Origin: Bigelowiella natans CCMP2755
Taxonomy: Eukaryota; Protista; Cercozoa
Reading direction: 5' to 3'
Length of the DNA stretch: 64,000 nucleotides
Assembly (NCBI GenBank): GCA_000320545.1
Contig: ADNK01000824.1
Span: 65,714 to 129,713, forward strand
Shown: positions 1 through 44,180 of the stretch, in pieces
How positions within the stretch are numbered: the stretch's first letter is position 1
Layout of the letters: every line of letters starts with the position of its first letter
Made by a program: the position numbers and the translations under genes
Notes under the pieces: model-generated
Seen by the model: only the letters and a program-made list of their open reading frames with translations
The model's database searches: none
What the model was told of the DNA's origin: nothing

Positions 1-1037
1 ACACGTCGATTGTACTGTTTCGAGCGCTGGTAGAGCCCTTCGTGAGTAGTTCTCTTGGCAACGAGGCCTTTGAGTGTTTTTCGAGGGCCATCTGCTCCGG
101 TGTGGTACTTCGTTGTCTCAAGGTGGAAATTCTGCGTGAAAGCCGTCTGTTTGGCCTGGTTGGTTGTTCCCTCCTTATCATACCCAGTCCACTGCATGGT
201 GGCTGTGCGGTTCTTTGGGCTTATGCTCGGGTCAGGGCCATGCCTTTTCAAAAAAAAATTATTAGTTTATTGATGGAGTTAAGATGGGATGCAGTGGTGA
301 GTTCTCTCTTCTGGCAAAGGCCATGCAACGACCAAAAAAAAGCTTCGAAACACCCCTATTTTATCACTATATGAAAATCTCGTTAGGAGAGAGACATTGC
401 TGGTTGCCGACTGGAAATAAACAGAATATAGGGTAAGGCATAAAAAATGTTATTTTCGATCTTGTACATCTCCACTGATCTGTTCTCCAGCATGTGCATA
501 TGTGCACGCGTGTGCGTGTGTGTTTTCTGCATAATGCCGCTCACATGAAGGCTGAGTCCTTATCAACGATCTTGTACTTAGGCATACTGATCTCCTTATG
601 CCACAGCTTGTTGTTAGTCGCCCACCTGTAAGAGCATAGCGTGCATCAGCTGTGCAAGCGCTCAACCTCATACTAACGACAGCACTGTACTGACACAAAA
701 GTTTCAGTGTTTCAGTGGAAACCAACAACAATTCGAGTGGCACCTCCACCACACTAGAGATGGTGCTCATTCATGCCCATGCAAGCTGCAAAAGAGTAGG
801 TGACGTACGGTGGAGAGCCGCAGCTGATGTGCAGGTAATTGGTTGGGTTGCGGTGCTTCTCTCCCTCGATCTTGTACCTTGATGAATTATGGACATATCA
901 TTGAATACTAGATACATGTAAGTGGTGTACGTGCATAATAATATGTAGCTATAAGTATAAATTTTACGATAGTTTGTTTCCCTTCAACTAGGTAGGCTAC
1001 TCCTCTCCCTCATATTTAAAGATTTACTAACCAAGTT

Positions 1038-1073
<36 letters not shown>

Positions 1074-1549
1074 AGCCACTACTATTTTGTTCTTCTTCTA
1101 CTCTGAATCTTGACCATCATCATACCTTGGCTTTGGTTTGTCCTCGTCCTCCTTAAACACTACATCGCGAAACTCAGGTCTACGGCCGTATCTAAAAGTG
1201 TAAATCAATAAGCGCCACAGGAAGCACACACACACACACACACGCACGCACGCACCCACGTACATATTAGCGTGTTTATCGGTATTAACGACATGCGAAC
1301 TGTTCATGGGTCGCATATGCATCTTAAAGGCCATAGACAATACGATGTATCACCTACACCGTCGATAGAAGACCAAAAAGGCTACACCCTCCTCCCCCTC
1401 CCCTCAAAGCATCTTATTCTGCAATTCATTACCCGGAGATAAGTTTCTTTCTGCTGGGGGATCTTGGCTTACCCATTTCATCGGGTGAAAAGACCAGCTG
1501 CGGAGACAGGAAGAATACCAGAAACATGTTTGTTTCATATTAGTACGAA

Positions 1550-20194: not shown

Positions 20195-20716
20195 ATGCAA
20201 GACCTTCTTCACTTCCGTGAACAAAGGCAGAGGCAGGAGAAGACCCTCGTGTGCTTTGTGAAGGCGCTGGTTGGAAGCAGGGTCGACTTTGAATTGCGTG
20301 GCGGTGCCATCGTACGTGGAGTTTTGGAAAGCGTGGACGCGATGATGAAGTGAGTGAACTTTTTTCTTATCTTATCATTTCGAATATGATTGCTGCTTCC
20401 TATCTGATTTATTTTCAAACAGCTGTAAATTAATCAAGGTCCGATGGAAGAAGAAGGTTGTATTTGTAGGGTTGTACTTCTAATATTCAGCGATGAAATC
20501 AATATCCACAATTTCTAATTTGTGTTATTCTCAAGGGACAAACTGCGAAATATGCCGAGTACTCGCACATTCCTGGACGACAAATTGTGTACATTCACAT
20601 TCCCGACGAGATCGACGTCAGCAAGAAGCTTGATTCATTTGTAATATCTTAAAGTCCAGATTATTCAAATTACCGATGATCATTAACTTAAGTTCTGATC
20701 TCAGTTCTCAAGATGA
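20195..20716 (+). CDS. LSM10: U7 snRNA-associated Sm-like protein LSm10
   Basis: Four exons: EKTLVCFVKALVGSRVDFELRGGAIVRGVLESVDAMMN (Sm1), CKLIKVRWKKK, AEYSHIPGRQIVYIHIPDEIDV (Sm2 with the Lsm10-type GR-x-I-x-Y-x-HIP), FSR*. The last exon is tentative. Confidence 0.8.
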
Positions 20717-36939: not shown

Positions 36940-37620
36940 AATTATTATCTAGTTATGTGCGATGCGAGTGCTACATGCGAGCATGCAAGCGCTTTCGATG
37001 CTGCATGTTTAATACATAGCATATCAAGATTTATGCATGTCTAGATGTATCCTCTAGAGTCTAGTACATTGTTGCTAGTTAGCTATAATAGACACAGCAA
37101 TACATAGCTAGCTAGGTGTAACGTACTCTAGCTAGCTAGTACTAGCAGATAGCTAGCTAGCTAGATAGCCGTACTACACATACATACTACGCGTACGCTG
37201 CATGTGCTCTAGCGTGGTCTAGCGGAGTACCACTACTAACAAGCAGGCGGACGCACGCTAGCTAGCTAGAGCACAGCATGTGATCTAGTGATGAATCTCT
37301 TTACTAGTACGTATTATATAGTCCATATAGCTCCGTATATGCTGTCATGAGACACAATATCTGCTAGTCTGTCCCATTCTAGCATTGCATCCATCCATCT
37401 AGCTACATCTAGACGTCGTGCACCAACATTGGTCTACATGCACTATAGATATGACTAGATGATGCGACATGCTAGCATGCACACAGCAGCCGCGGAGCAC
37501 GCCGATGCCACGTATACACACATGAAGATAAGTACGTTCGGCAATGTACAATAACTTTACTTCTGGATGTACATGAGACTATTAGACTAGCCATGAGACC
37601 GCATGTACAATTGAAACCCA
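36940..37620. other. Palindrome-rich convergent intergenic spacer (strongest example of 8)
   Basis: Dense CTAG/TAGCTA/GCATGC/TCTAGA/GTAC words and (CTAG)n runs, few homopolymer runs, located between the LSM11 and porin 3' ends. Confidence 0.7.
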
Positions 37621-37854
37621 ATTGCGTTGGTTATCGCAAAGTGGGGTCAAACTCTGCAGAGTCAGTCAAAAATGGAGCAAACGAAAAAGGTTTTGATATT
37701 GTACAAGAAACTAACGAATTGTGCTAGATCGACAGATGATGGAAGACCATTAGCCAACATTGGCAGTCGACAACTCCACAAAGGGATATGAATATCAACT
37801 CTCAAAAATGTAGCCGAGGCTTCAATCGTAGTCGTGGAATGCAAAAAGGCGAAT

Positions 37855-39394
37855 TTAGATCATGGAACCGAGATGAACTTGGACTCCCATTTTTGGCTTC
37901 GCGCCAAGATCATTGAGGTTGACATCTGCACCAGCGCTAACTTCAACACCTGCACGGACCTTGTGGTGGACAGCAACACCAACAGTTCCTGAAGCATCGA
38001 TGCGTCCGGACACGGTGGAAGAGTCATCGAGGGAGTGGGAAACTCCTGCCATGAAATTGTGGCCCTTAGTCTGGAAGTTGTAGCTCCCCTTAGCGGCAAC
38101 TTTTGTGTCTGCGTCAAGAGTCTTGTATGCGGTTGCAGAAACTGTGTCGGTACCCTGAAGCGATCCAGCGATAGAGTAGTCTGGTCCGGAGTACTTCATT
38201 CCGATGCTAACCAAACACAGCAGACGAGAATGCCCAAGTTAATTCACATTCGCAGCGGGAGATTTAACTATTTATAAGTGGCCGCGTAACCAACGATTGT
38301 TTAATATTATATCACAACCTGTGCGCAGATACGCCGTCCTGAGTGCCCTTAACCTCTGCTCCCAGGGAAACTCCATCGAGGTTGTTGATTCCTCCTACTG
38401 CCATGCTTCCGTGGAAAGATCCAAGTGTTTTGTCGGTCAGGCCACCAACACCAAGACTAGCTTTGAAGTTGTCCGAGGTGTACTTGGCTTCTGCATCAAC
38501 CGAAGATCCTCCACTGGAAACCTTCATTTCAAGATCTGCATCCCCCATCTGAACCAAAACGTAGCTCTCGTTAGGGCTGGCGATTCTCACACCTACTATT
38601 GTCTGATCTTTCAACAGTGAAGTCAACCTTTTGGGTGGTTTTTCCGCCGGCACGGATCCTTGATTTATCATCCAGAGAGATGAATCCCTTCAAGTTATCT
38701 CCGAACTGTCTTTCGAGCTCCAAGGAAATGAGGTCGCTTGTCTTTGCGGTGCTGCTGTCGCGGAAACGGATCTCACCTGTGGATCAACGATTATGTTCAG
38801 AAAGGATACTCATATATAACTCCATTCCTAAGTGCGTAAGAGACTCACCGGGTTCGTCAAAGGTCTTGGAAGCGACGACTTTGTTGCTACCGCTGGTTGC
38901 CTCGAGCTTCACCTTGCTGTCCTTGGGAAACTTCTTATCTGAACATCATTGGCCATGACTTGAGTGAAAGTATCTAAATCTCTTTAGATGATTAAAGTAC
39001 CGTCAAGAATTCCTCGAGCATCGGACCCAAAGTCTCCGTAGAATCCCTTTGCATCCGCATACTTCGATCTGTCAAGACAGCGAGTTTAATTAGGCGGGAT
39101 TCATAGCGTGACACCTTCCAGTGCTCACCTGAAGCCAGAATTTGCGTCACAGCCTCCTCTGAGACGGTAGAGGCTGGGGCCACGGTTATATTGCGTGACG
39201 CCTTCTGGATATTCAGAAACCCCGCCTACATTGTAAAAGCAGCCATTACACGAAGTTCCGACGAAGGAATCGAAGAACTAACCTTGGAGGTTTCCGGATC
39301 TTCCGGTTGTAAAGACAACACAGCAAAGAACCACTGCAGCCAAGGCTGCAGGAAGGTAGAGCGAAGATCGGGAGCGACGAGAGCGAGCGAACAT
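37855..39394 (-). CDS. VDAC/Porin_3 family beta-barrel channel with an N-terminal signal-peptide-like leader ending in RLRGG
   Basis: Exon 1 39394-39283 MFARSRRSRSSLYLPAALAAVVLCCVVFTTGRSGNLQ; exon 2 39225-39129 GGVSEYPEGVTQYNRGPSLYRLRGGCDANSGF; then KGFYGDFGSDARGILD (VDAC N-terminal helix). C-terminal strands LDDSSTVSGRIDASGTVGVAVHHKVRAGVEVSAGADVN...KMGVQVHL. All junctions are GT-AG and in phase. Confidence 0.85.
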
Positions 39395-40397
39395 CTTCCA
39401 AAAGGGGGGGGGTGGGGATCTGACGGTTGAAGTCTGTGTTAAAAACAATAGGGTCTCTCGCAAGAGCCGAGCGGCACAAATCCGAACATTTATTTCTTCC
39501 ACAAAGACAGGGTATTTACCGTGTCGCATTTCAGAATTACACCCAGTTTTCACAGGCCACTGAGAAAAACTGCGAGACCGGAAATTGACCCTTCTCCGAA
39601 TGGGCGGGAAGATTGTGATTTCCCAATGTGAGACAACTAGAATGAACAAAATTTAGACAGAATTCCAGCCCATTCCTCTTGGTGATTTATTGCCGCAAAG
39701 AGCTTTTGGACGGGATACCCCTTCTTGGTAGTTCTTACGCATTCCAGTACCCCCTTTTCAGATGAAGGTGTCATCGGGGGCATTGGATTTAAATGTGTGC
39801 GACATAATTCTGAAGCCAATTCCGACTGTTAATCGACCTGTTTATTTCTACACCGTGTCACATCATCTAAGTCATCAATTGTGAAGCAAACGGATGATTG
39901 GTCAATTCTTTTCTTTTTTTTTTTCCACAGTGAATCGTCCAAACTGCTGTTCTCTTTGTTCTTCTCTTTCCTCTTCGCTGCTCTTCGATTCCCACTCTTC
40001 CGAACGGCCAAAATTGGACATTCGCCGAATTTCTGCGTGGAGCTCTTCAGACAGAAATTCCACCTGAAAACATCTTGAAGTGCCCACGAGATCTGCACCC
40101 TTCAGGCAGGAACCGTAGCTTTTGGCGGCGAAAATCGTCCAAGTTGGATAAGATTTAATTTATACTAAATATATCCTAAATAAAATGTCTAGTTAGAGCA
40201 CCGAGACGAGGAAGACTTAGGCTACAACAGCTCCTGATTCCCGACCGCAGGGTCAATTCGTCTGCTGCACTTGCGACCATAACAGCCCCCCCAAGCCCCA
40301 AGTAGAGATACGGACAAGGCTGGGATAGCGGACTTGATTACATAGATAGTGTGGGAAATTTCTGCGAGCTGGCATACCTTGCTGCGAGTGTCCTCCA

Positions 40398-41946
40398 ATG
40401 GTTGTGGTCGATAGTTGCGGCGTGTGCGCATCTTCATCCTATGGCCGTTCTTCGTCAGTAGTTCGTGCAAGACTCAGGCGTGCCGCTGCCACTGCCGCTG
40501 TTCTCTGTCTGGGGGCAATCTTGAATGTCCATCACCTCACGACGACGCCCCGCAATAACAACTACGGTGACTTCGCAAGGGTGCGGGGAAGGAGCAATCG
40601 CACTGCGGCAGCATTAGCTGCATACCACACAGCGTTCTCTGCCGCAAATATCGCCACATCTGAATGCAGAAGGGCTGGCAGATTTGACAGATGTCCTGAT
40701 GCAAGTTCTTGGAACATACTCAGAGGGGGGAAGCCTACGGTGTTGCTAAGCTAGATAATCCAGAAATGGAACTTTTGTCAAGTTATTTCGCCGTATTGAG
40801 CATTAGTCCTGCGATATGCCGGAGCTATTTTCGCATGATGAGTTCGTCATTTCTTTTACTACTATAAATGCAAACCACAACAAGCGACACAGCTCCGGCT
40901 TCGATCCGAACAGCAACACTGATGACATGCATAAAAACCGACACACGAATACCGATAATTGCCGTTGTCTCAATCATCCCTTCTTTAGCAGCACCTACTC
41001 TAATCGTTCTCACTGTATCCACAAAATTATTCAGCGACGTGAGCTAAGTGAAGACTCGAGCAGCGATGGTATATATTCATGGCTTTCCCCGTTAGAATTA
41101 CGTTCCTAATACTTTAAATACTTGCATCTTCGATACACAGACTTTGAGAATTCTTGGGTCTACCAGCACACTGTCAATCGACCTTTTCTCTGCGAGGTAG
41201 CAGTAGTTATATATAGTGTTAAAGATAGTATATACAATAGGAGGAAGAAGAAGAAGAAGAAGAAGAAGAAGAAGAAGAAGAAGAAAATATTTTAATTATT
41301 TTCGTTCCTCACTCTCACTCCACTTTGTTCTCTCGTGTCCTACCATCATTTTTCATTATTACTTATAGGTAAATCCGGAATGGATCCGCGACACCTTCAA
41401 CCTAAATGGTCTATCGACGCAGGTAGTAGATCGGTCATCTCTGCGACATTCTAAGCTCAGCACCTGAGAGAAGTTTGTTTCATCTGTTCGTAACTTGTAC
41501 CAATCAGATTCCTCACTACGAGATCTGTCTTCGGAGAATTCTGGACTATGTACGACAGAAGCCAAATGATACGTTATCTGCGCTATTATTATCGCTACCG
41601 TTTCAATCATCATTATCATCATTGTCATTATCATTATCATCCTACTCGTCGCAACCATCACATTAAATGCTTATAAATGCCACACATAAACAATAAATGC
41701 TGATAGCCATGTATCTACCAAAATACAGGAGGTTGGTTTCGACAAGCTGCCCCCGAAGAAACAGGCAGAGCTCGAAGCATGTTGTGGTAGTTCTAGGACC
41801 ATCCACAATAGAATATACGAGTTTAGAATTACTTCATTGAGAATAACAAAAACGTGAATTTCTAACGATATTTCATTGATTCGAATGAAAATGGTGGCTA
41901 TGATCATGACAAGTAGGAAAGATGGCGAGGAGTACAGCACATCGTC

Positions 41947-41984
<38 letters not shown>

Positions 41985-42845
41985 CGCTACAATCTATCTC
42001 CTGATTTATCACTTCAGAAACTCTGTATGGGTTGGTGCATGCACGGTACATCACCTCACCGGAGGGGCTTGACCGGATGAGGCAGAAGTATGAAAGAGGA
42101 GGTACTTCCCGCTTGTGATCATCACCAAAGCCTTAAACGAAGAGACCAATTTCGATCATAATAATAATAGTTGGAGAGCTGTGTATTTTTAATTTTATTG
42201 TACTGCAGCGAAAATTAATGATGCCGAAAATGACTGCGAATTTGGCCTGTTCTCCTCCTCCTCCTCCTCCTCCTCCTCCTCCTCCTCCTCCTCGCCCTTC
42301 TCTTATTGTTGCTCGGAAGACTTTGGAGCATGCCCTAGGGCCCTTTGCAAAGGCTTTCGGCTGCTGCCTGTTGGAATAACGGTACTGCGCATGCATGTAT
42401 GTGTGTGCGCTCAATGGGGAAACCTTTAGGTTGTAGGTGATATCAACCACTTCTTCTTCTTCTCCTTCTTCTTCTTCTTTTTCTCCTTCTTCTTGTGTAT
42501 CAGGACGAGCTCAGGCTGAGGCCCGTGAAGACGTTCTGCCCGAATTGCAAGTAAGCGTTTCTTCTTTCGACAACAACCTGACCACCTCTTCCTTCCCATT
42601 GGTTGTGTAGTAGTAATAGGACGATGATGATGGATGATGATGATGATATACTTGCTAGCAGTGATAGTATCTCCACAACGTTGAATGATAAGATTGTCCT
42701 TTTTGAAAAGGAAAAGGCATAAACACACACATACACACACGCACACACACAGCTGTAGCGAATGAGCTATATTATCCCAACTTGGTGGGCTGTGGAACTT
42801 AAATAACACCTCTTCGAGGTTCGTTGCTGATGGTTGTCTGTTCTC

Positions 42846-42884
<39 letters not shown>

Positions 42885-43164
42885 ATTATCTGGCTGTCTT
42901 ACCTTGCAGGGAGCTCTACCACGTTCGAGTAAGGCATGCGGCGACCATCGACGGGGCATTCTACACGAGGTAGATCAAGTTTTACAACAATATGACTCTC
43001 TCTTCTCTATCTTTTCTTCTTCTTTTTCTTGTTCTTCCTCCTCCTCTTCTTCATCAACACCAACATCAATCTGTTCTTTTTGATCCTTTGATCGAAAGGA
43101 AACCACGACAACTCAGCTGTCATGAAATACCATAGCGATACTCTTAGAGCTATAATATTATCCC

Positions 43165-43198
<34 letters not shown>

Positions 43199-44180
43199 GT
43201 CATCATCATTATCATCATCATTGTCGTCATCATTATCATCATGATTGTCGCTGACAGTGTAGTTCCTCTTATGCACTGCTTCATCATTGCTGACTTATGT
43301 GTTCTGATGGTGATCTGCTGCCTCACTCACTCACTCACTCACTCACTCTGCTGCAGAACATTTCCGCACATGTTTCTACTCAAGTACCCCCACCTACAAC
43401 CTAAATGCCAGCCGGTAAATCAGACAAAAAGAATGATAATTCGCATTGATGCTTTGGAGGCGTTAATCTTCTTTTATTGCATCACCATCTCACCAGCATA
43501 ATAGTAGTCTGAATCCAAGCTACTTTCTAGCTACTACATCCTGAAACGACGTGGCGGGCACGAATGACTGATCATCATTGTCTTCTCAGGTGAAGTATCA
43601 ACCGACAATATTTGGGTTCAACGTCAAGTATCCGGATCTGCCAACGGTAGTAGAAAGTAGAAGGGAAGGAGAAGGAAGAGGAAGAGGGAGGAGGAGGTTC
43701 CCTCCTTTTAAATCTAAGTTTCTTCCATCATGACAGGCCGATGACTATGCACTTCAAGAAAAGGCAAAGTTGGAAAAGGAGCAAGCAGAGGCAAGGGCCA
43801 AAGAAGAGCAAGCAGAACGAGTAACCAATCATGAATTGTTTCGTGGAAGTAAGTTTATGCTTCTCTAACACTCCTCATGCACAACAGGGCAAGGACGAGG
43901 AAAAGAAGGAAGAAAATGGTAGTGTGGACCCGAACGCTACTTCTAAGAAAGAGCAAGCTTCACAGGAGGCAAAACCAAAAGGTTTCATGCTTCTACGGAA
44001 GAATGTGTTAAATGTGATCTAACAACTTTAAATTACACAGCAGGCGAACCTCAGCCAACATCACTTTTACCGGGCGTTCCGATGGATAATCAGACTGTTC
44101 AGCCTCAAGATGCAGAGATGAAAGGAAGAGATCAAGACCCCCCGGCACAAAATTCCTCGCCCGTGCAGACGCGGACATAA
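40398..44180 (+). CDS. CKB: Casein kinase II regulatory (beta) subunit with a long N-terminal leader (hydrophobic segment + LRGG) and a charged C-terminal tail (not visible in the ORF track)
   Basis: Exons: SWVYQHTVNRPFLCE|VNPEWIRDTFNLNGLSTQ|IPHYEICLRRILDY, LYGLVHARYITSPEGLDRM, DFGACPRALC...LLPVG, VKTFCPNC (zinc finger), IDGAFYTRTFPHMFLLKYP, YQPTIFGF. Tail EKAKLEKEQAE...KDEEKKEE...; TAA at 44178-44180. Confidence 0.9.

What the first reader, a model, noticed from the sequence alone, without database searches (positions are those of the whole stretch)
39152..40730. Ubiquitin-tail-like (R)LRGG motifs end the leaders of both genes in a head-to-head pair: a possible DUB-processed targeting signal
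Seen: porin leader ...SLYRLRGG|C (39152-39166, - strand) and CK2-beta leader ...WNILRGG|K (40719-40730, + strand). Each motif follows a hydrophobic segment and precedes the conserved mature domain, and the two unrelated genes share one ~1-kb divergent region. The stromal rpl1 leader in the same window has no such motif. Established: LRGG is the ubiquitin C-terminus recognised and cleaved by deubiquitinases. Inference: a class of non-stromal (PPC or plastid-membrane) preproteins is matured by a DUB-like peptidase cutting after GG, and these two cargo genes may be co-regulated.
Basis: partly seen in the sequence, partly recalled or inferred. Interest (0 to 1): 0.85.

Follow-up and report, generated by a model that had tools for sequence, protein, structure and literature searches.

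The report
Ubiquitin-tail motif ending two import leaders
Two neighbouring genes of the alga Bigelowiella natans (a pore protein and a kinase regulator) carry import leaders that end in ubiquitin's last residues. In the pore protein this motif is conserved across related algae, so it is probably a real cutting or sorting mark for proteins sent to the remnant cytoplasm of the swallowed green alga.

Summary
RLRGG (39152-39166, -) and LRGG (40719-40730, +) lie in transcribed, in-frame, obligatory N-terminal extensions of a VDAC-like porin and a divergent third CK2-beta paralogue of Bigelowiella natans. Spliced RNA contigs support both gene models.

- **Porin:** the motif is not chance. In four porin lineages (B. 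natans, Partenskyella glossopodia, two unnamed) RLRGG is the only invariant block of an otherwise unalignable leader.
- **CK2-beta:** I found no orthologue, so this case rests on three things: position, about 0.1-0.5% chance odds, and recurrence of the motif elsewhere.
- **Recurrence:** in my sample of 45 genomic RLRGG sites, at least five sit after a hydrophobic segment, one of them just before a J domain. I met another such gene by accident.
- **Earlier notes:** this scan had already noted at least 16 leader-end (R)LRGG cases on other DNA of this genome. I tested only a few.
- **Control:** the plastid-type rpl1 leader in the window lacks the motif.
- **Not shown:** cutting after GG by a deubiquitinase-like enzyme is plausible but untested, and I identified no enzyme. 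Co-regulation is not supported.
- **Literature:** no searchable paper describes the motif.

The parts
39283..39424 (-). Porin exon 1: about 30 nt of 5' UTR, ATG at 39394, basic n-region and hydrophobic signal-peptide-like core (residues 14-28 = 39311-39355)
   Evidence: RNA contig X4 reaches 39424 and joins 39282/39283 to 39225; translation; hydropathy
39129..39225 (-). Porin exon 2: transit-like linker, the RLRGG motif, then Cys and a short spacer
   Evidence: Spliced contigs in X1 and X4; joined CDS is open and matches JGI protein 86949 at the N-terminus
39152..39166 (-). RLRGG, identical to the last five residues of ubiquitin. It is the only invariant block in the leaders of four porin lineages and is followed by Cys within 0-2 residues
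37600..39068 (-). Porin exons 3-7: 39001-39068, 38849-38938, 38628-38776, 38319-38548, 37600-38206 (stop at 37855, then 3' UTR). They encode the VDAC/Tom40-type beta barrel
   Evidence: Joints; Pfam Porin_3 at 73 bits; model shows a helix at 83-93 then about 20 strands; best solved-structure matches are VDAC and Tom40
39425..40222 (.). Divergent intergenic region between the mapped 5' ends of the two mRNAs
   Evidence: No RNA contig depth over 39570-40160
40223..40739 (+). CK2-beta exon 1: 5' UTR without ATG, ATG at 40398, then a 114-aa leader with a long basic n-region, a hydrophobic core (residues 30-44 = 40485-40529) and a 63-aa transit-like linker
   Evidence: Contigs start at 40223/40224 and splice at 40739
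40716..40730 (+). ILRGG. LRGG (40719-40730) equals ubiquitin's last four residues. It lies 19 residues before the conserved SW of the CK2-beta N-terminus, where canonical paralogues have their own start
41035..43700 (+). CK2-beta exons 2-12 (partial): 41035-41068, 41141-41196, 41369-41422, 41508-41549, 41729-41786, 42018-42101, 42320-42381, 42504-42550, 42910-42969, 43357-43414, 43590 onwards. The 3' end was not mapped
   Evidence: Joints; tblastn against the canonical paralogue; open joined frame; Pfam CK_II_beta exon hit at 29.8 bits
22189..22932 (-). Control: first exon of the plastid-type ribosomal protein L1, with a signal peptide and transit-like leader but no [LIVM]RGG

Best explanation
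[quoted passage not shown] This leader type sends nucleus-encoded proteins into the four-membrane plastid complex of Bigelowiella natans.

Their cargo is of the cytosolic or outer-membrane type (a CK2 regulatory subunit and a VDAC/Tom40-family barrel). I therefore infer that the destination is the periplastidal compartment (PPC), the remnant cytoplasm around the nucleomorph, and a membrane facing it, rather than the stroma.

The (R)LRGG at the end of each leader is a selected short linear motif that copies ubiquitin's C-terminus. The most likely mechanism, which is inferred and not shown, runs as follows. Signal peptidase removes the signal peptide and the precursor crosses the second membrane. 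A ubiquitin-tail-specific cysteine protease in the PPC (UCH, USP or NEDD8-protease type) then cuts after GG. This releases a protein whose N-terminus lies about where the leaderless paralogues begin.

Shown: transcription, reading frame, leader architecture, conservation of the porin motif, and recurrence of the motif. Inferred: the compartment, the cleavage and the enzyme class.
For: 1. Gene models and obligatory leaders.
2. RLRGG is the only invariant block in the leaders of four porin lineages that are 29-60% identical overall; the spacers on both sides vary.
3. The porin motif lies in a low-confidence (pLDDT about 25), unstructured-looking stretch 20 aa before the barrel's N-terminal helix. 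This says little, because the whole N-terminal half of the model is low confidence.
4. The genome has two canonical leaderless CK2-beta genes. The window's copy is a divergent third one (about 39% identity to other CK2-beta) with the leader, the usual pattern for PPC or nucleomorph-directed paralogues.
5. The CK2-beta motif sits 19 aa before the conserved SW. The canonical copies begin 21 and 30 aa before it.
6. Recurrence in my own sample of 45 genomic RLRGG sites: hydrophobic segment, linker, then RLRGG in L131, L159, L167 and L145, and RLRGG 12 aa before a J-domain start in L153. I also met by accident a gene with Met, hydrophobic core, S/P/R-rich linker, FLRGG, then Met (L123).
7. An LRGG-ATG site lies 2.3 kb upstream of an NBP35-type exon on the same strand.
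8. A PPC ubiquitin system is plausible: Hopkins et al. 2012 (PMC3542566) report a nuclear gene for a ubiquitin monomer with signal and transit peptides.
9. This alga makes many natural ubiquitin fusions that must be cut after RLRGG, such as ubiquitin-actin and ubiquitin-S27a.
10. No residue after GG in the cases seen is Pro (C, H, G, K, M, A, I).
Against: - No cleavage data of any kind. Supplementary proteomics files were not held.
- Deubiquitinases normally need the folded ubiquitin body. The leaders contain no ubiquitin domain, and only 17-63 residues lie between the hydrophobic core and the motif.
- No leader-bearing deubiquitinase was identified.
- The CK2-beta motif lacks the Arg at P5 and the following Cys of the porin motif, and its conservation could not be tested.
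- The automated leader criterion on the genomic sample is only weakly significant (4/45 against a 3.0% background, p = 0.044), and two of those four automated hits (L134, L157) looked like low-complexity false positives on inspection. Whole-genome pattern counts are inconclusive: RLRGG 1234 against 1498 for the control, LRGG-ATG 147 against 98, and a codon subset 29 against 27.
- Only one Porin_3 gene was detectable in the genome, so this could be the cell's main VDAC. The exon-wise search has low sensitivity.
Confidence: 0.4

Rival explanations
1. The motif is functional, but not as a deubiquitinase site. It could be a sorting or retention signal that keeps the precursor in the PPC, for example by stopping onward passage through Toc/Tic or by docking to a receptor. 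It could also be cut by a dedicated non-DUB processing peptidase.
For: The same conservation and recurrence evidence applies. The literature says that what separates PPC from plastid precursors in chlorarachniophytes is unknown (PMC3542566; PMC6105332), so a discriminating motif is needed. RLR also fits an Arg-based R-x-R sorting pattern (my own knowledge). There is no ubiquitin fold for a deubiquitinase to grip.
Against: The exact match to ubiquitin's tail (P4 Leu or Ile, P3 Arg, P2-P1 Gly-Gly), and the placement directly before a native Met in some cases, are what a cut site would look like. A mere retention tag has less reason to sit at the exact leader/mature border.
Confidence: 0.3
2. The porin's RLRGG-x-Cys is conserved because it belongs to the mature porin, for example as a regulatory or lipid- or disulfide-bearing N-terminal segment. 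The CK2-beta LRGG is then a coincidence, and the pairing has no shared meaning.
For: A Cys follows within 0-2 residues in all four porins but not in CK2-beta. Two such leaders share some 4-mer 26% of the time. CK2-beta conservation is untested.
Against: LRGG at that place in the CK2-beta leader has a 0.1-0.5% chance. The same motif closes other, unrelated leaders. The spacer between the motif and the porin's N-terminal helix varies in length and sequence, and the segment has very low model confidence.
Confidence: 0.15
3. The motif is a neutral relic. Leader cassettes were copied from a PPC-targeted ubiquitin or ubiquitin-fusion gene by exon shuffling and dragged ubiquitin's tail with them.
For: Ubiquitin fusions and stray ubiquitin tails are common in this genome, for example an internal ..HLVLRLRGG inside a 765-aa open frame. 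A ubiquitin-like monomer is itself preceded by ..RIRGG. An intron separates the porin signal peptide from the motif exon.
Against: The two leaders show no detectable homology to each other (p = 0.33). There is no ubiquitin-domain signal in the leaders. A neutral relic would not stay invariant across lineages whose leaders are otherwise unalignable.
Confidence: 0.08
4. The hydrophobic N-termini are not plastid-complex leaders. The porin is the ordinary mitochondrial VDAC, or an ER/secretory membrane protein, with a lineage-specific extension, and the motif has nothing to do with the PPC.
For: Only one Porin_3 gene was found in the genome. It has very high RNA contig depth, as expected of an abundant VDAC. 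There is no localisation data.
Against: All four orthologues keep a signal-peptide-like N-terminus, which would divert a VDAC from mitochondria. The exon-wise search also missed Tom40, so it is insensitive. The CK2-beta copy is an extra paralogue beside two canonical ones.
Confidence: 0.07

Closest known systems
Processing of ubiquitin and ubiquitin-like precursors and natural ubiquitin fusions by deubiquitinases (UCH/USP; NEDD8 by UCH-L3/SENP8), including the ubiquitin-actin and ubiquitin-ribosomal fusions of chlorarachniophytes
   Same: The same P4-P1 residues (L/I-R-G-G, often R-L-R-G-G) sit directly upstream of the protein to be released. The same genome carries many true ubiquitin fusions that must be cut there.
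   Different: There is no ubiquitin fold upstream, only a signal peptide and a 17-63-aa unstructured linker. Cleavage was not shown.
LXGG cleavage sites of coronavirus papain-like proteases, which also act as deubiquitinases (my own knowledge)
   Same: A linear ubiquitin-tail-like motif in a non-ubiquitin polypeptide is used as a maturation site and cut after GG.
   Different: That system is a viral polyprotein context with a viral enzyme. No homologous enzyme was sought or found here.
SELMA import machinery with the PPC deubiquitinase ptDUP in diatoms and other red-lineage complex plastids (PMC3101018)
   Same: Ubiquitin chemistry and a deubiquitinating enzyme in the PPC are linked to maturation of imported precursors.
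   Different: There, ubiquitin is attached covalently to the precursor during transport and the leader holds no LRGG. Chlorarachniophytes are reported to lack SELMA (my own knowledge, not tested here).
Bipartite targeting signals (signal peptide plus transit-peptide-like) of complex plastids
   Same: The architecture of both leaders and of the rpl1 control matches.
   Different: For chlorarachniophytes no feature separating PPC from stromal precursors has been described (PMC6105332; PMC3542566). A conserved leader-end motif is not part of the known signal.
Double-glycine leaders of bacteriocins cut by C39 peptidase domains (my own knowledge)
   Same: The leader ends in Gly-Gly and is removed by a papain-like cysteine peptidase.
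   Different: That system is bacterial export with a different upstream consensus. There is no signal peptide and no relation to ubiquitin.

Membership tests
Ubiquitin / ubiquitin-like domain (PF00240) | Beta-grasp domain of about 72 residues upstream of the C-terminal GG | tested here: not met
   Pfam scans of the porin precursor and the CK2-beta leader give no ubiquitin hit. Only 30 and 63 residues lie between the hydrophobic core and the motif.
Ubiquitin / ubiquitin-like domain (PF00240) | C-terminal tail L-R-(L)-R-G-G | tested here: met
   RLRGG in the porin and three orthologue lineages; ILRGG in CK2-beta. B. natans ubiquitin itself ends ..VLRLRGG.
Deubiquitinase substrate | Hydrolysis of the bond after GG by a UCH/USP/OTU/SENP8-type enzyme | not testable with these tools
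   No N-terminal proteomics was available and no enzyme was identified.
Eukaryotic porin (VDAC/Tom40, Pfam Porin_3) | Profile match above the curated cut-off | tested here: met
   73.3 bits against a cut-off of 28.4 for P0015, and 69.7 and 36.6 bits for two relatives; exon hit at 60.2 bits.
Eukaryotic porin (VDAC/Tom40, Pfam Porin_3) | N-terminal helix followed by a roughly 19-strand barrel | tested here: inconclusive
   The model has a helix at 83-93 and about 20 strands, and the best matches are yeast porin, mouse and human VDAC1 and Tom40 (E about 1e-10). However, mean pLDDT is 55.6, TM about 0.5 and rmsd is large.
Eukaryotic porin (VDAC/Tom40, Pfam Porin_3) | No cleavable N-terminal presequence (import into the mitochondrial outer membrane through internal or C-terminal signals) | tested here: not met
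   All four lineages carry a signal-peptide-like N-terminus plus linker.
Casein kinase II regulatory subunit (Pfam CK_II_beta) | Profile match and conserved core including the Cys-x-x-x-x-Cys and Cys-x-x-Cys zinc-binding pairs | tested here: met
   Exon hit at 29.8 bits against a cut-off of 27. Exon-by-exon tblastn against the canonical paralogue covers positions 35-205. The joined frame shows CPRALC and CPNC.
Bipartite plastid-complex leader (signal peptide plus transit-like) | Basic n-region, hydrophobic core of 15 or more residues, then a hydroxylated, basic linker with net positive charge | tested here: met
   Mean KD over 15 aa is 2.77 (porin) and 2.08 (CK2-beta). Linker basic versus acidic counts are 3 versus 2 and 9 versus 4. 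The layout matches the rpl1 control. No SignalP-type predictor was available.
Bipartite plastid-complex leader (signal peptide plus transit-like) | Demonstrated import into the plastid complex or PPC | not testable with these tools
   Needs GFP fusions or fractionation.
Double-glycine bacteriocin leader | Consensus upstream of GG and a cognate C39 peptidase/ABC exporter | not tested
   Considered only as an analogy. This is a eukaryotic nuclear gene with a signal peptide.

The most novel reading that the evidence does not exclude
A ubiquitin-tail mimic, (R)LRGG, at the end of the bipartite leader is the long-sought mark of proteins destined for the periplastidal compartment and nucleomorph of chlorarachniophytes. 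It is cut by a compartment-resident deubiquitinase-type protease. This would be a new class of presequence processing. In this window it serves both a soluble nuclear-type regulator (CK2-beta) and a VDAC-family barrel, which would then be a pore of a plastid-complex membrane facing that compartment.
Probability: 0.35. Interest if true: 0.9.

Novelty: new variant of a known kind. Interest (0 to 1): 0.72.

Why it matters
The literature I could search says it is unknown how chlorarachniophytes tell periplastidal or nucleomorph proteins from stromal ones. It also leaves open how those leaders are removed in a lineage reported to lack the ERAD-derived SELMA importer (PMC3542566, PMC6105332).

A conserved, easily mutated five-residue motif at the leader end would help in three ways:
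- It makes the question directly testable through GG-to-AA leader-GFP fusions, N-terminomics and protease assays.
- It gives a simple rule for finding the imported proteome of the remnant cytoplasm.
- It suggests that ubiquitin-tail recognition has been reused for organelle protein maturation.

A VDAC-family barrel carrying the same leader is also a concrete candidate for a solute or protein pore in the plastid complex.

Tried and rejected
- **CK2-beta orthologues, metagenome scan.** I scanned metagenome and transcriptome contigs with an alignment of exon 7. All 80 loci are canonical CK2-beta at about 39% identity, none with a comparable leader. One (L095) is a relative's copy of the other B. 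natans paralogue.
- **CK2-beta orthologues, protein search.** The 114-aa leader exon found nothing. The length window of that tool excludes full-length relatives.
- **Joined spliced proteins.** They were never sent to a search tool. I searched exon by exon, or used the database's own entry P0015.
- **Leader homology.** The two leaders are not homologous to each other.
- **Whole-genome pattern counts against the reversed-pattern control.** These were inconclusive, because the control does not share CpG and codon biases.
- **LRGG-ATG sites.** I planned to fetch 58 valid-codon sites and matched controls.
- **Pfam on open frames after RLRGG in sampled loci.** The only hit was one weak methyltransferase match just below the curated cut-off (21.4 against 22.3 bits).
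- **Histone family search.** It showed only canonical, leaderless copies.
- **XPG_N search.** It found a leader-bearing FEN1-like gene whose leader ends SLGG, not LRGG.
- **Second VDAC or Tom40 gene.** The search found none, but it is exon-wise and insensitive.
- **Proteomics supplements of Hopkins et al.** Not held. Hirakawa et al. 2010 and 2012 are not held either.
- It contained a typed peptide and was not run. I re-ran it from file references.
- **Complex prediction.** None was run, because no enzyme partner was identified.
Full report
**Observation.** The region holds two head-to-head genes of an intron-rich eukaryote. On the minus strand, translation from ATG 39394 gives a basic, then hydrophobic N-terminus. 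After a 57-nt intron the reading frame continues to ..SLYRLRGG followed by Cys. Positions 39152-39166 encode RLRGG exactly. On the plus strand, ATG 40398 opens a 114-codon exon ending ..SSWNILRGGKPT, and 40719-40730 encode LRGG.

**Transcripts.** Public runs of the same organism hold about 36% of the words of the stretch, as expected for spliced RNA. Laid on the window, contigs from three studies show every porin intron (CT..AC on the plus strand) and the CK2-beta introns (GT..AG).
- The porin mRNA reaches 39424. By my reading of the sequence, the 30 nt of 5' UTR it covers hold no ATG.
- The CK2-beta mRNA starts at 40223/40224 and has no ATG before 40398.
- CK2-beta exon 1 joins exon 2 (41035-41068) in phase, continuing ..LRGGKPT-RRELSEDSSSD-DFENSW.. 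into the conserved domain.
- Neither protein has another Met before its domain, so both leaders are obligatory.
- The raw-read run covers only the porin 3' end and says nothing about the leaders.
- I did not send joined spliced proteins to any search tool. I searched exon by exon, or through the database's own entry.

**Organism and gene identity.** A profile-free search with the last porin exon returned a cluster whose member P0015 is JGI Bigna1 protein 86949 of Bigelowiella natans. P0015 has the same N-terminus as my RNA model.
- The protein matches Pfam Porin_3 at 73 bits.
- A low-confidence model (mean pLDDT 55.6) shows the hydrophobic helix at 14-31, a low-confidence coil at 32-82 holding the motif, a helix at 83-93 and then about 20 strands.
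- The best solved-structure matches are VDAC and Tom40.
- The plus-strand gene is a CK2 regulatory subunit.
- The genome has two canonical, leaderless CK2-beta genes. The window's copy is a third, divergent one, about 39% identical to any CK2-beta found.

**Is the motif more than chance? The porin.** On its own, the coincidence is weak. Composition-matched shuffles of the two leaders share some 4-mer in 26% of trials, and the real pair also shares AALA and ALAA. The porin motif, however, is conserved in every relative found:
- Partenskyella glossopodia (MMETSP1318) reads ..AVARLRGGGGC..
- An unnamed transcriptome contig (P0032/L038) reads ..AAFRLRGGHC..
- A relative only 29% identical (L037, reading upstream of the called start) reads ..AVTRLRGGHC..

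In the four-way alignment the invariant columns of the first 78 residues are one Ala and one Leu in the hydrophobic core, plus R58-L59-R60-G61-G62. The linkers on both sides differ in length and sequence. This is the signature of a selected short linear motif.

**Is the motif more than chance? CK2-beta.** I could not reach an orthologue. Given the porin motif as a prior, LRGG occurs in shuffled CK2-beta leaders in 0.5% of trials anywhere and 0.1% in the last 30 residues. It also sits where the canonical paralogues begin.

**Recurrence.** After my own tests, I asked what the scan had noted before. At least 16 other first-reader notes in this genome describe leaders ending in (R)LRGG on cytosolic or nuclear-type proteins. 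They include NTF2, an E2, importins, Rae1, eL41, NBP35, DnaJ, an eIF5-like factor and others. Some have follow-ups reporting conservation in relatives. These are unchecked AI notes, so I tested what I could.
- I took the first 100 genomic matches to the degenerate RLRGG codon pattern and kept the 46 that truly encode RLRGG. One of these (C115) is the ubiquitin-S27a gene already in hand, so I fetched the other 45.
- At least five of the 45 show a hydrophobic segment, a linker and then RLRGG: L131, L159, L167, L145, and L153, where RLRGG lies 12 residues before a J-domain start. L153 independently rediscovers the DnaJ note.
- A strict automated rule gives 4/45 against a 3.0% background (p = 0.044). 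This is weak, and the rule misses cases split by introns, the porin itself among them. On inspection two of the four automated hits (L134, L157) looked like low-complexity false positives.
- By accident, a locus fetched for FEN1 holds another head-to-head pair of leader-bearing genes. One ends ..SFLRGG directly before a Met.
- An LRGG-ATG site lies 2.3 kb upstream of an NBP35-type exon on the same strand.
- Whole-genome pattern counts against a reversed-pattern control are inconclusive.
- The plastid-type rpl1 in the window has the same signal peptide plus transit layout but no [LIVM]RGG. The only other LRGG in an open frame of 50 aa or more in the 64 kb lies inside an Sm-fold domain.

**Mechanism.** Both leaders look like the bipartite signals of complex plastids. 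The cargo types, and the existence of leaderless paralogues, point to the periplastidal compartment (PPC) rather than the stroma. The motif equals the P5-P1 or P4-P1 residues of ubiquitin, whose B. natans form ends ..VLRLRGG.

Several points make cutting after GG by a ubiquitin-tail-specific protease in that compartment the simplest reading:
- The alga has many natural ubiquitin fusions that need cutting after this tail.
- The literature reports a nuclear gene for a signal- and transit-peptide-bearing ubiquitin monomer (PMC3542566).
- The porin motif lies in a region of very low model confidence that may be flexible, though the model is poor throughout its N-terminal half.

I give this reading 0.4. 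The main reasons against it are that the leaders contain no ubiquitin fold, which most deubiquitinases require, that no enzyme was found, and that there is no cleavage evidence. A sorting or retention role, or a different protease, is nearly as likely (0.3).

**Co-regulation.** The evidence does not support it. The contig depth ratio of the two mRNAs changes from about 227 to 8 to 0.45 between runs, although contig depth is a poor measure of expression.

**Comparison with known systems and novelty.** The closest analogues are:
- deubiquitinase processing of ubiquitin fusions;
- LXGG cleavage by viral papain-like proteases;
- the SELMA/ptDUP system of red-lineage plastids (PMC3101018);
- double-glycine bacteriocin leaders.

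None of these is a leader-end ubiquitin-tail mimic in a plastid-complex presequence. Full-text searches for LRGG or RLRGG together with periplastid, nucleomorph, transit peptide, or plastid plus presequence found no paper. Two papers state that the feature separating PPC from plastid precursors in chlorarachniophytes is unknown. Key subscription papers (Hirakawa 2010 and 2012, Curtis 2012) could not be read, so prior description cannot be excluded.

**Verdict.** The porin motif is real and selected. The CK2-beta motif is probably the same thing, at about 70%. The deubiquitinase mechanism is a good but untested hypothesis. Co-regulation is not supported. This scan has found the same leader-end motif before on other DNA of this genome.

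Noticed in passing
L123 (G000:C494:44101-47247), about 257-712 (-) and 1158-1355 (+): A second head-to-head pair of leader-bearing genes about 450 bp apart. One is a FEN1-like gene whose hydrophobic leader ends ..YDNSLGG directly before IRGLSKLI. The other is an unidentified gene whose leader ends ..SFLRGG directly before a Met. Divergent pairing of leader-bearing genes may be more than an anecdote.
   Followed up: partly
window 38549-38627 (-): The public JGI model 86949 (P0015) reads 54 nt of this intron as coding (18 extra residues). RNA contigs of three studies splice it out, and relatives lack the insert.
   Followed up: partly
window 42551-42909, especially 42618-42720: Inside a CK2-beta intron lies a separately expressed piece with higher contig depth than CK2-beta itself, continuing into 114 letters not on this stretch. 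All RNA contigs also lack one base at 42632 relative to the genome. This may be a nested or antisense transcript, or an assembly error.
   Followed up: no
G000 whole genome; L001: Only one Porin_3 gene (this one) was detectable by the exon-wise search, and no Tom40 or leaderless VDAC. Either the search is too insensitive for short exons, or the mitochondrial porins are very divergent.
   Followed up: partly
L015/L028 (G000:C694), L014, L016, L018/L019: Unusual ubiquitin architectures. A 765-aa open frame has three ubiquitin units, then a large unknown domain that contains an internal ..FILHLVLRLRGG. There are two ubiquitin-actin fusions. Two near-identical 421-aa frames end in ubiquitin with RLRGT instead of RLRGG.
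   Followed up: no
L027 (G000:C3106), minus strand: A divergent ubiquitin-like monomer (MQIMIKSL..) is preceded in frame by ..NLERIRGG directly before its Met. A signal-peptide-like open frame lies about 100 nt upstream in another frame, but I could not find an in-phase splice. It may be the signal- and transit-peptide-bearing ubiquitin mentioned by Hopkins et al.
   Followed up: partly
window 20294-20305 (+): LRGG also occurs inside an Sm-fold (LSM-like) domain..VDFELRGGAIVRG... This in-domain instance shows that the tetrapeptide alone is not diagnostic.
   Followed up: no
window 39300-39310 (-) and about 22780 (-): In both the porin and the rpl1 leader the hydrophobic core is followed by small residues, then G-R-S (..TTGRS....IYGRS..). 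This may be a shared signal-peptidase context.
   Followed up: no
window 41240-41290, 41600-41650, 41940-41990, 42255-42300, 42450-42495: CK2-beta introns are full of trinucleotide microsatellites (AAG, CAT, CCT and CTT runs). The read tool dropped joints at such repeats, so the 42382-42503 intron rests on homology and depth, not on a listed joint.
   Followed up: partly
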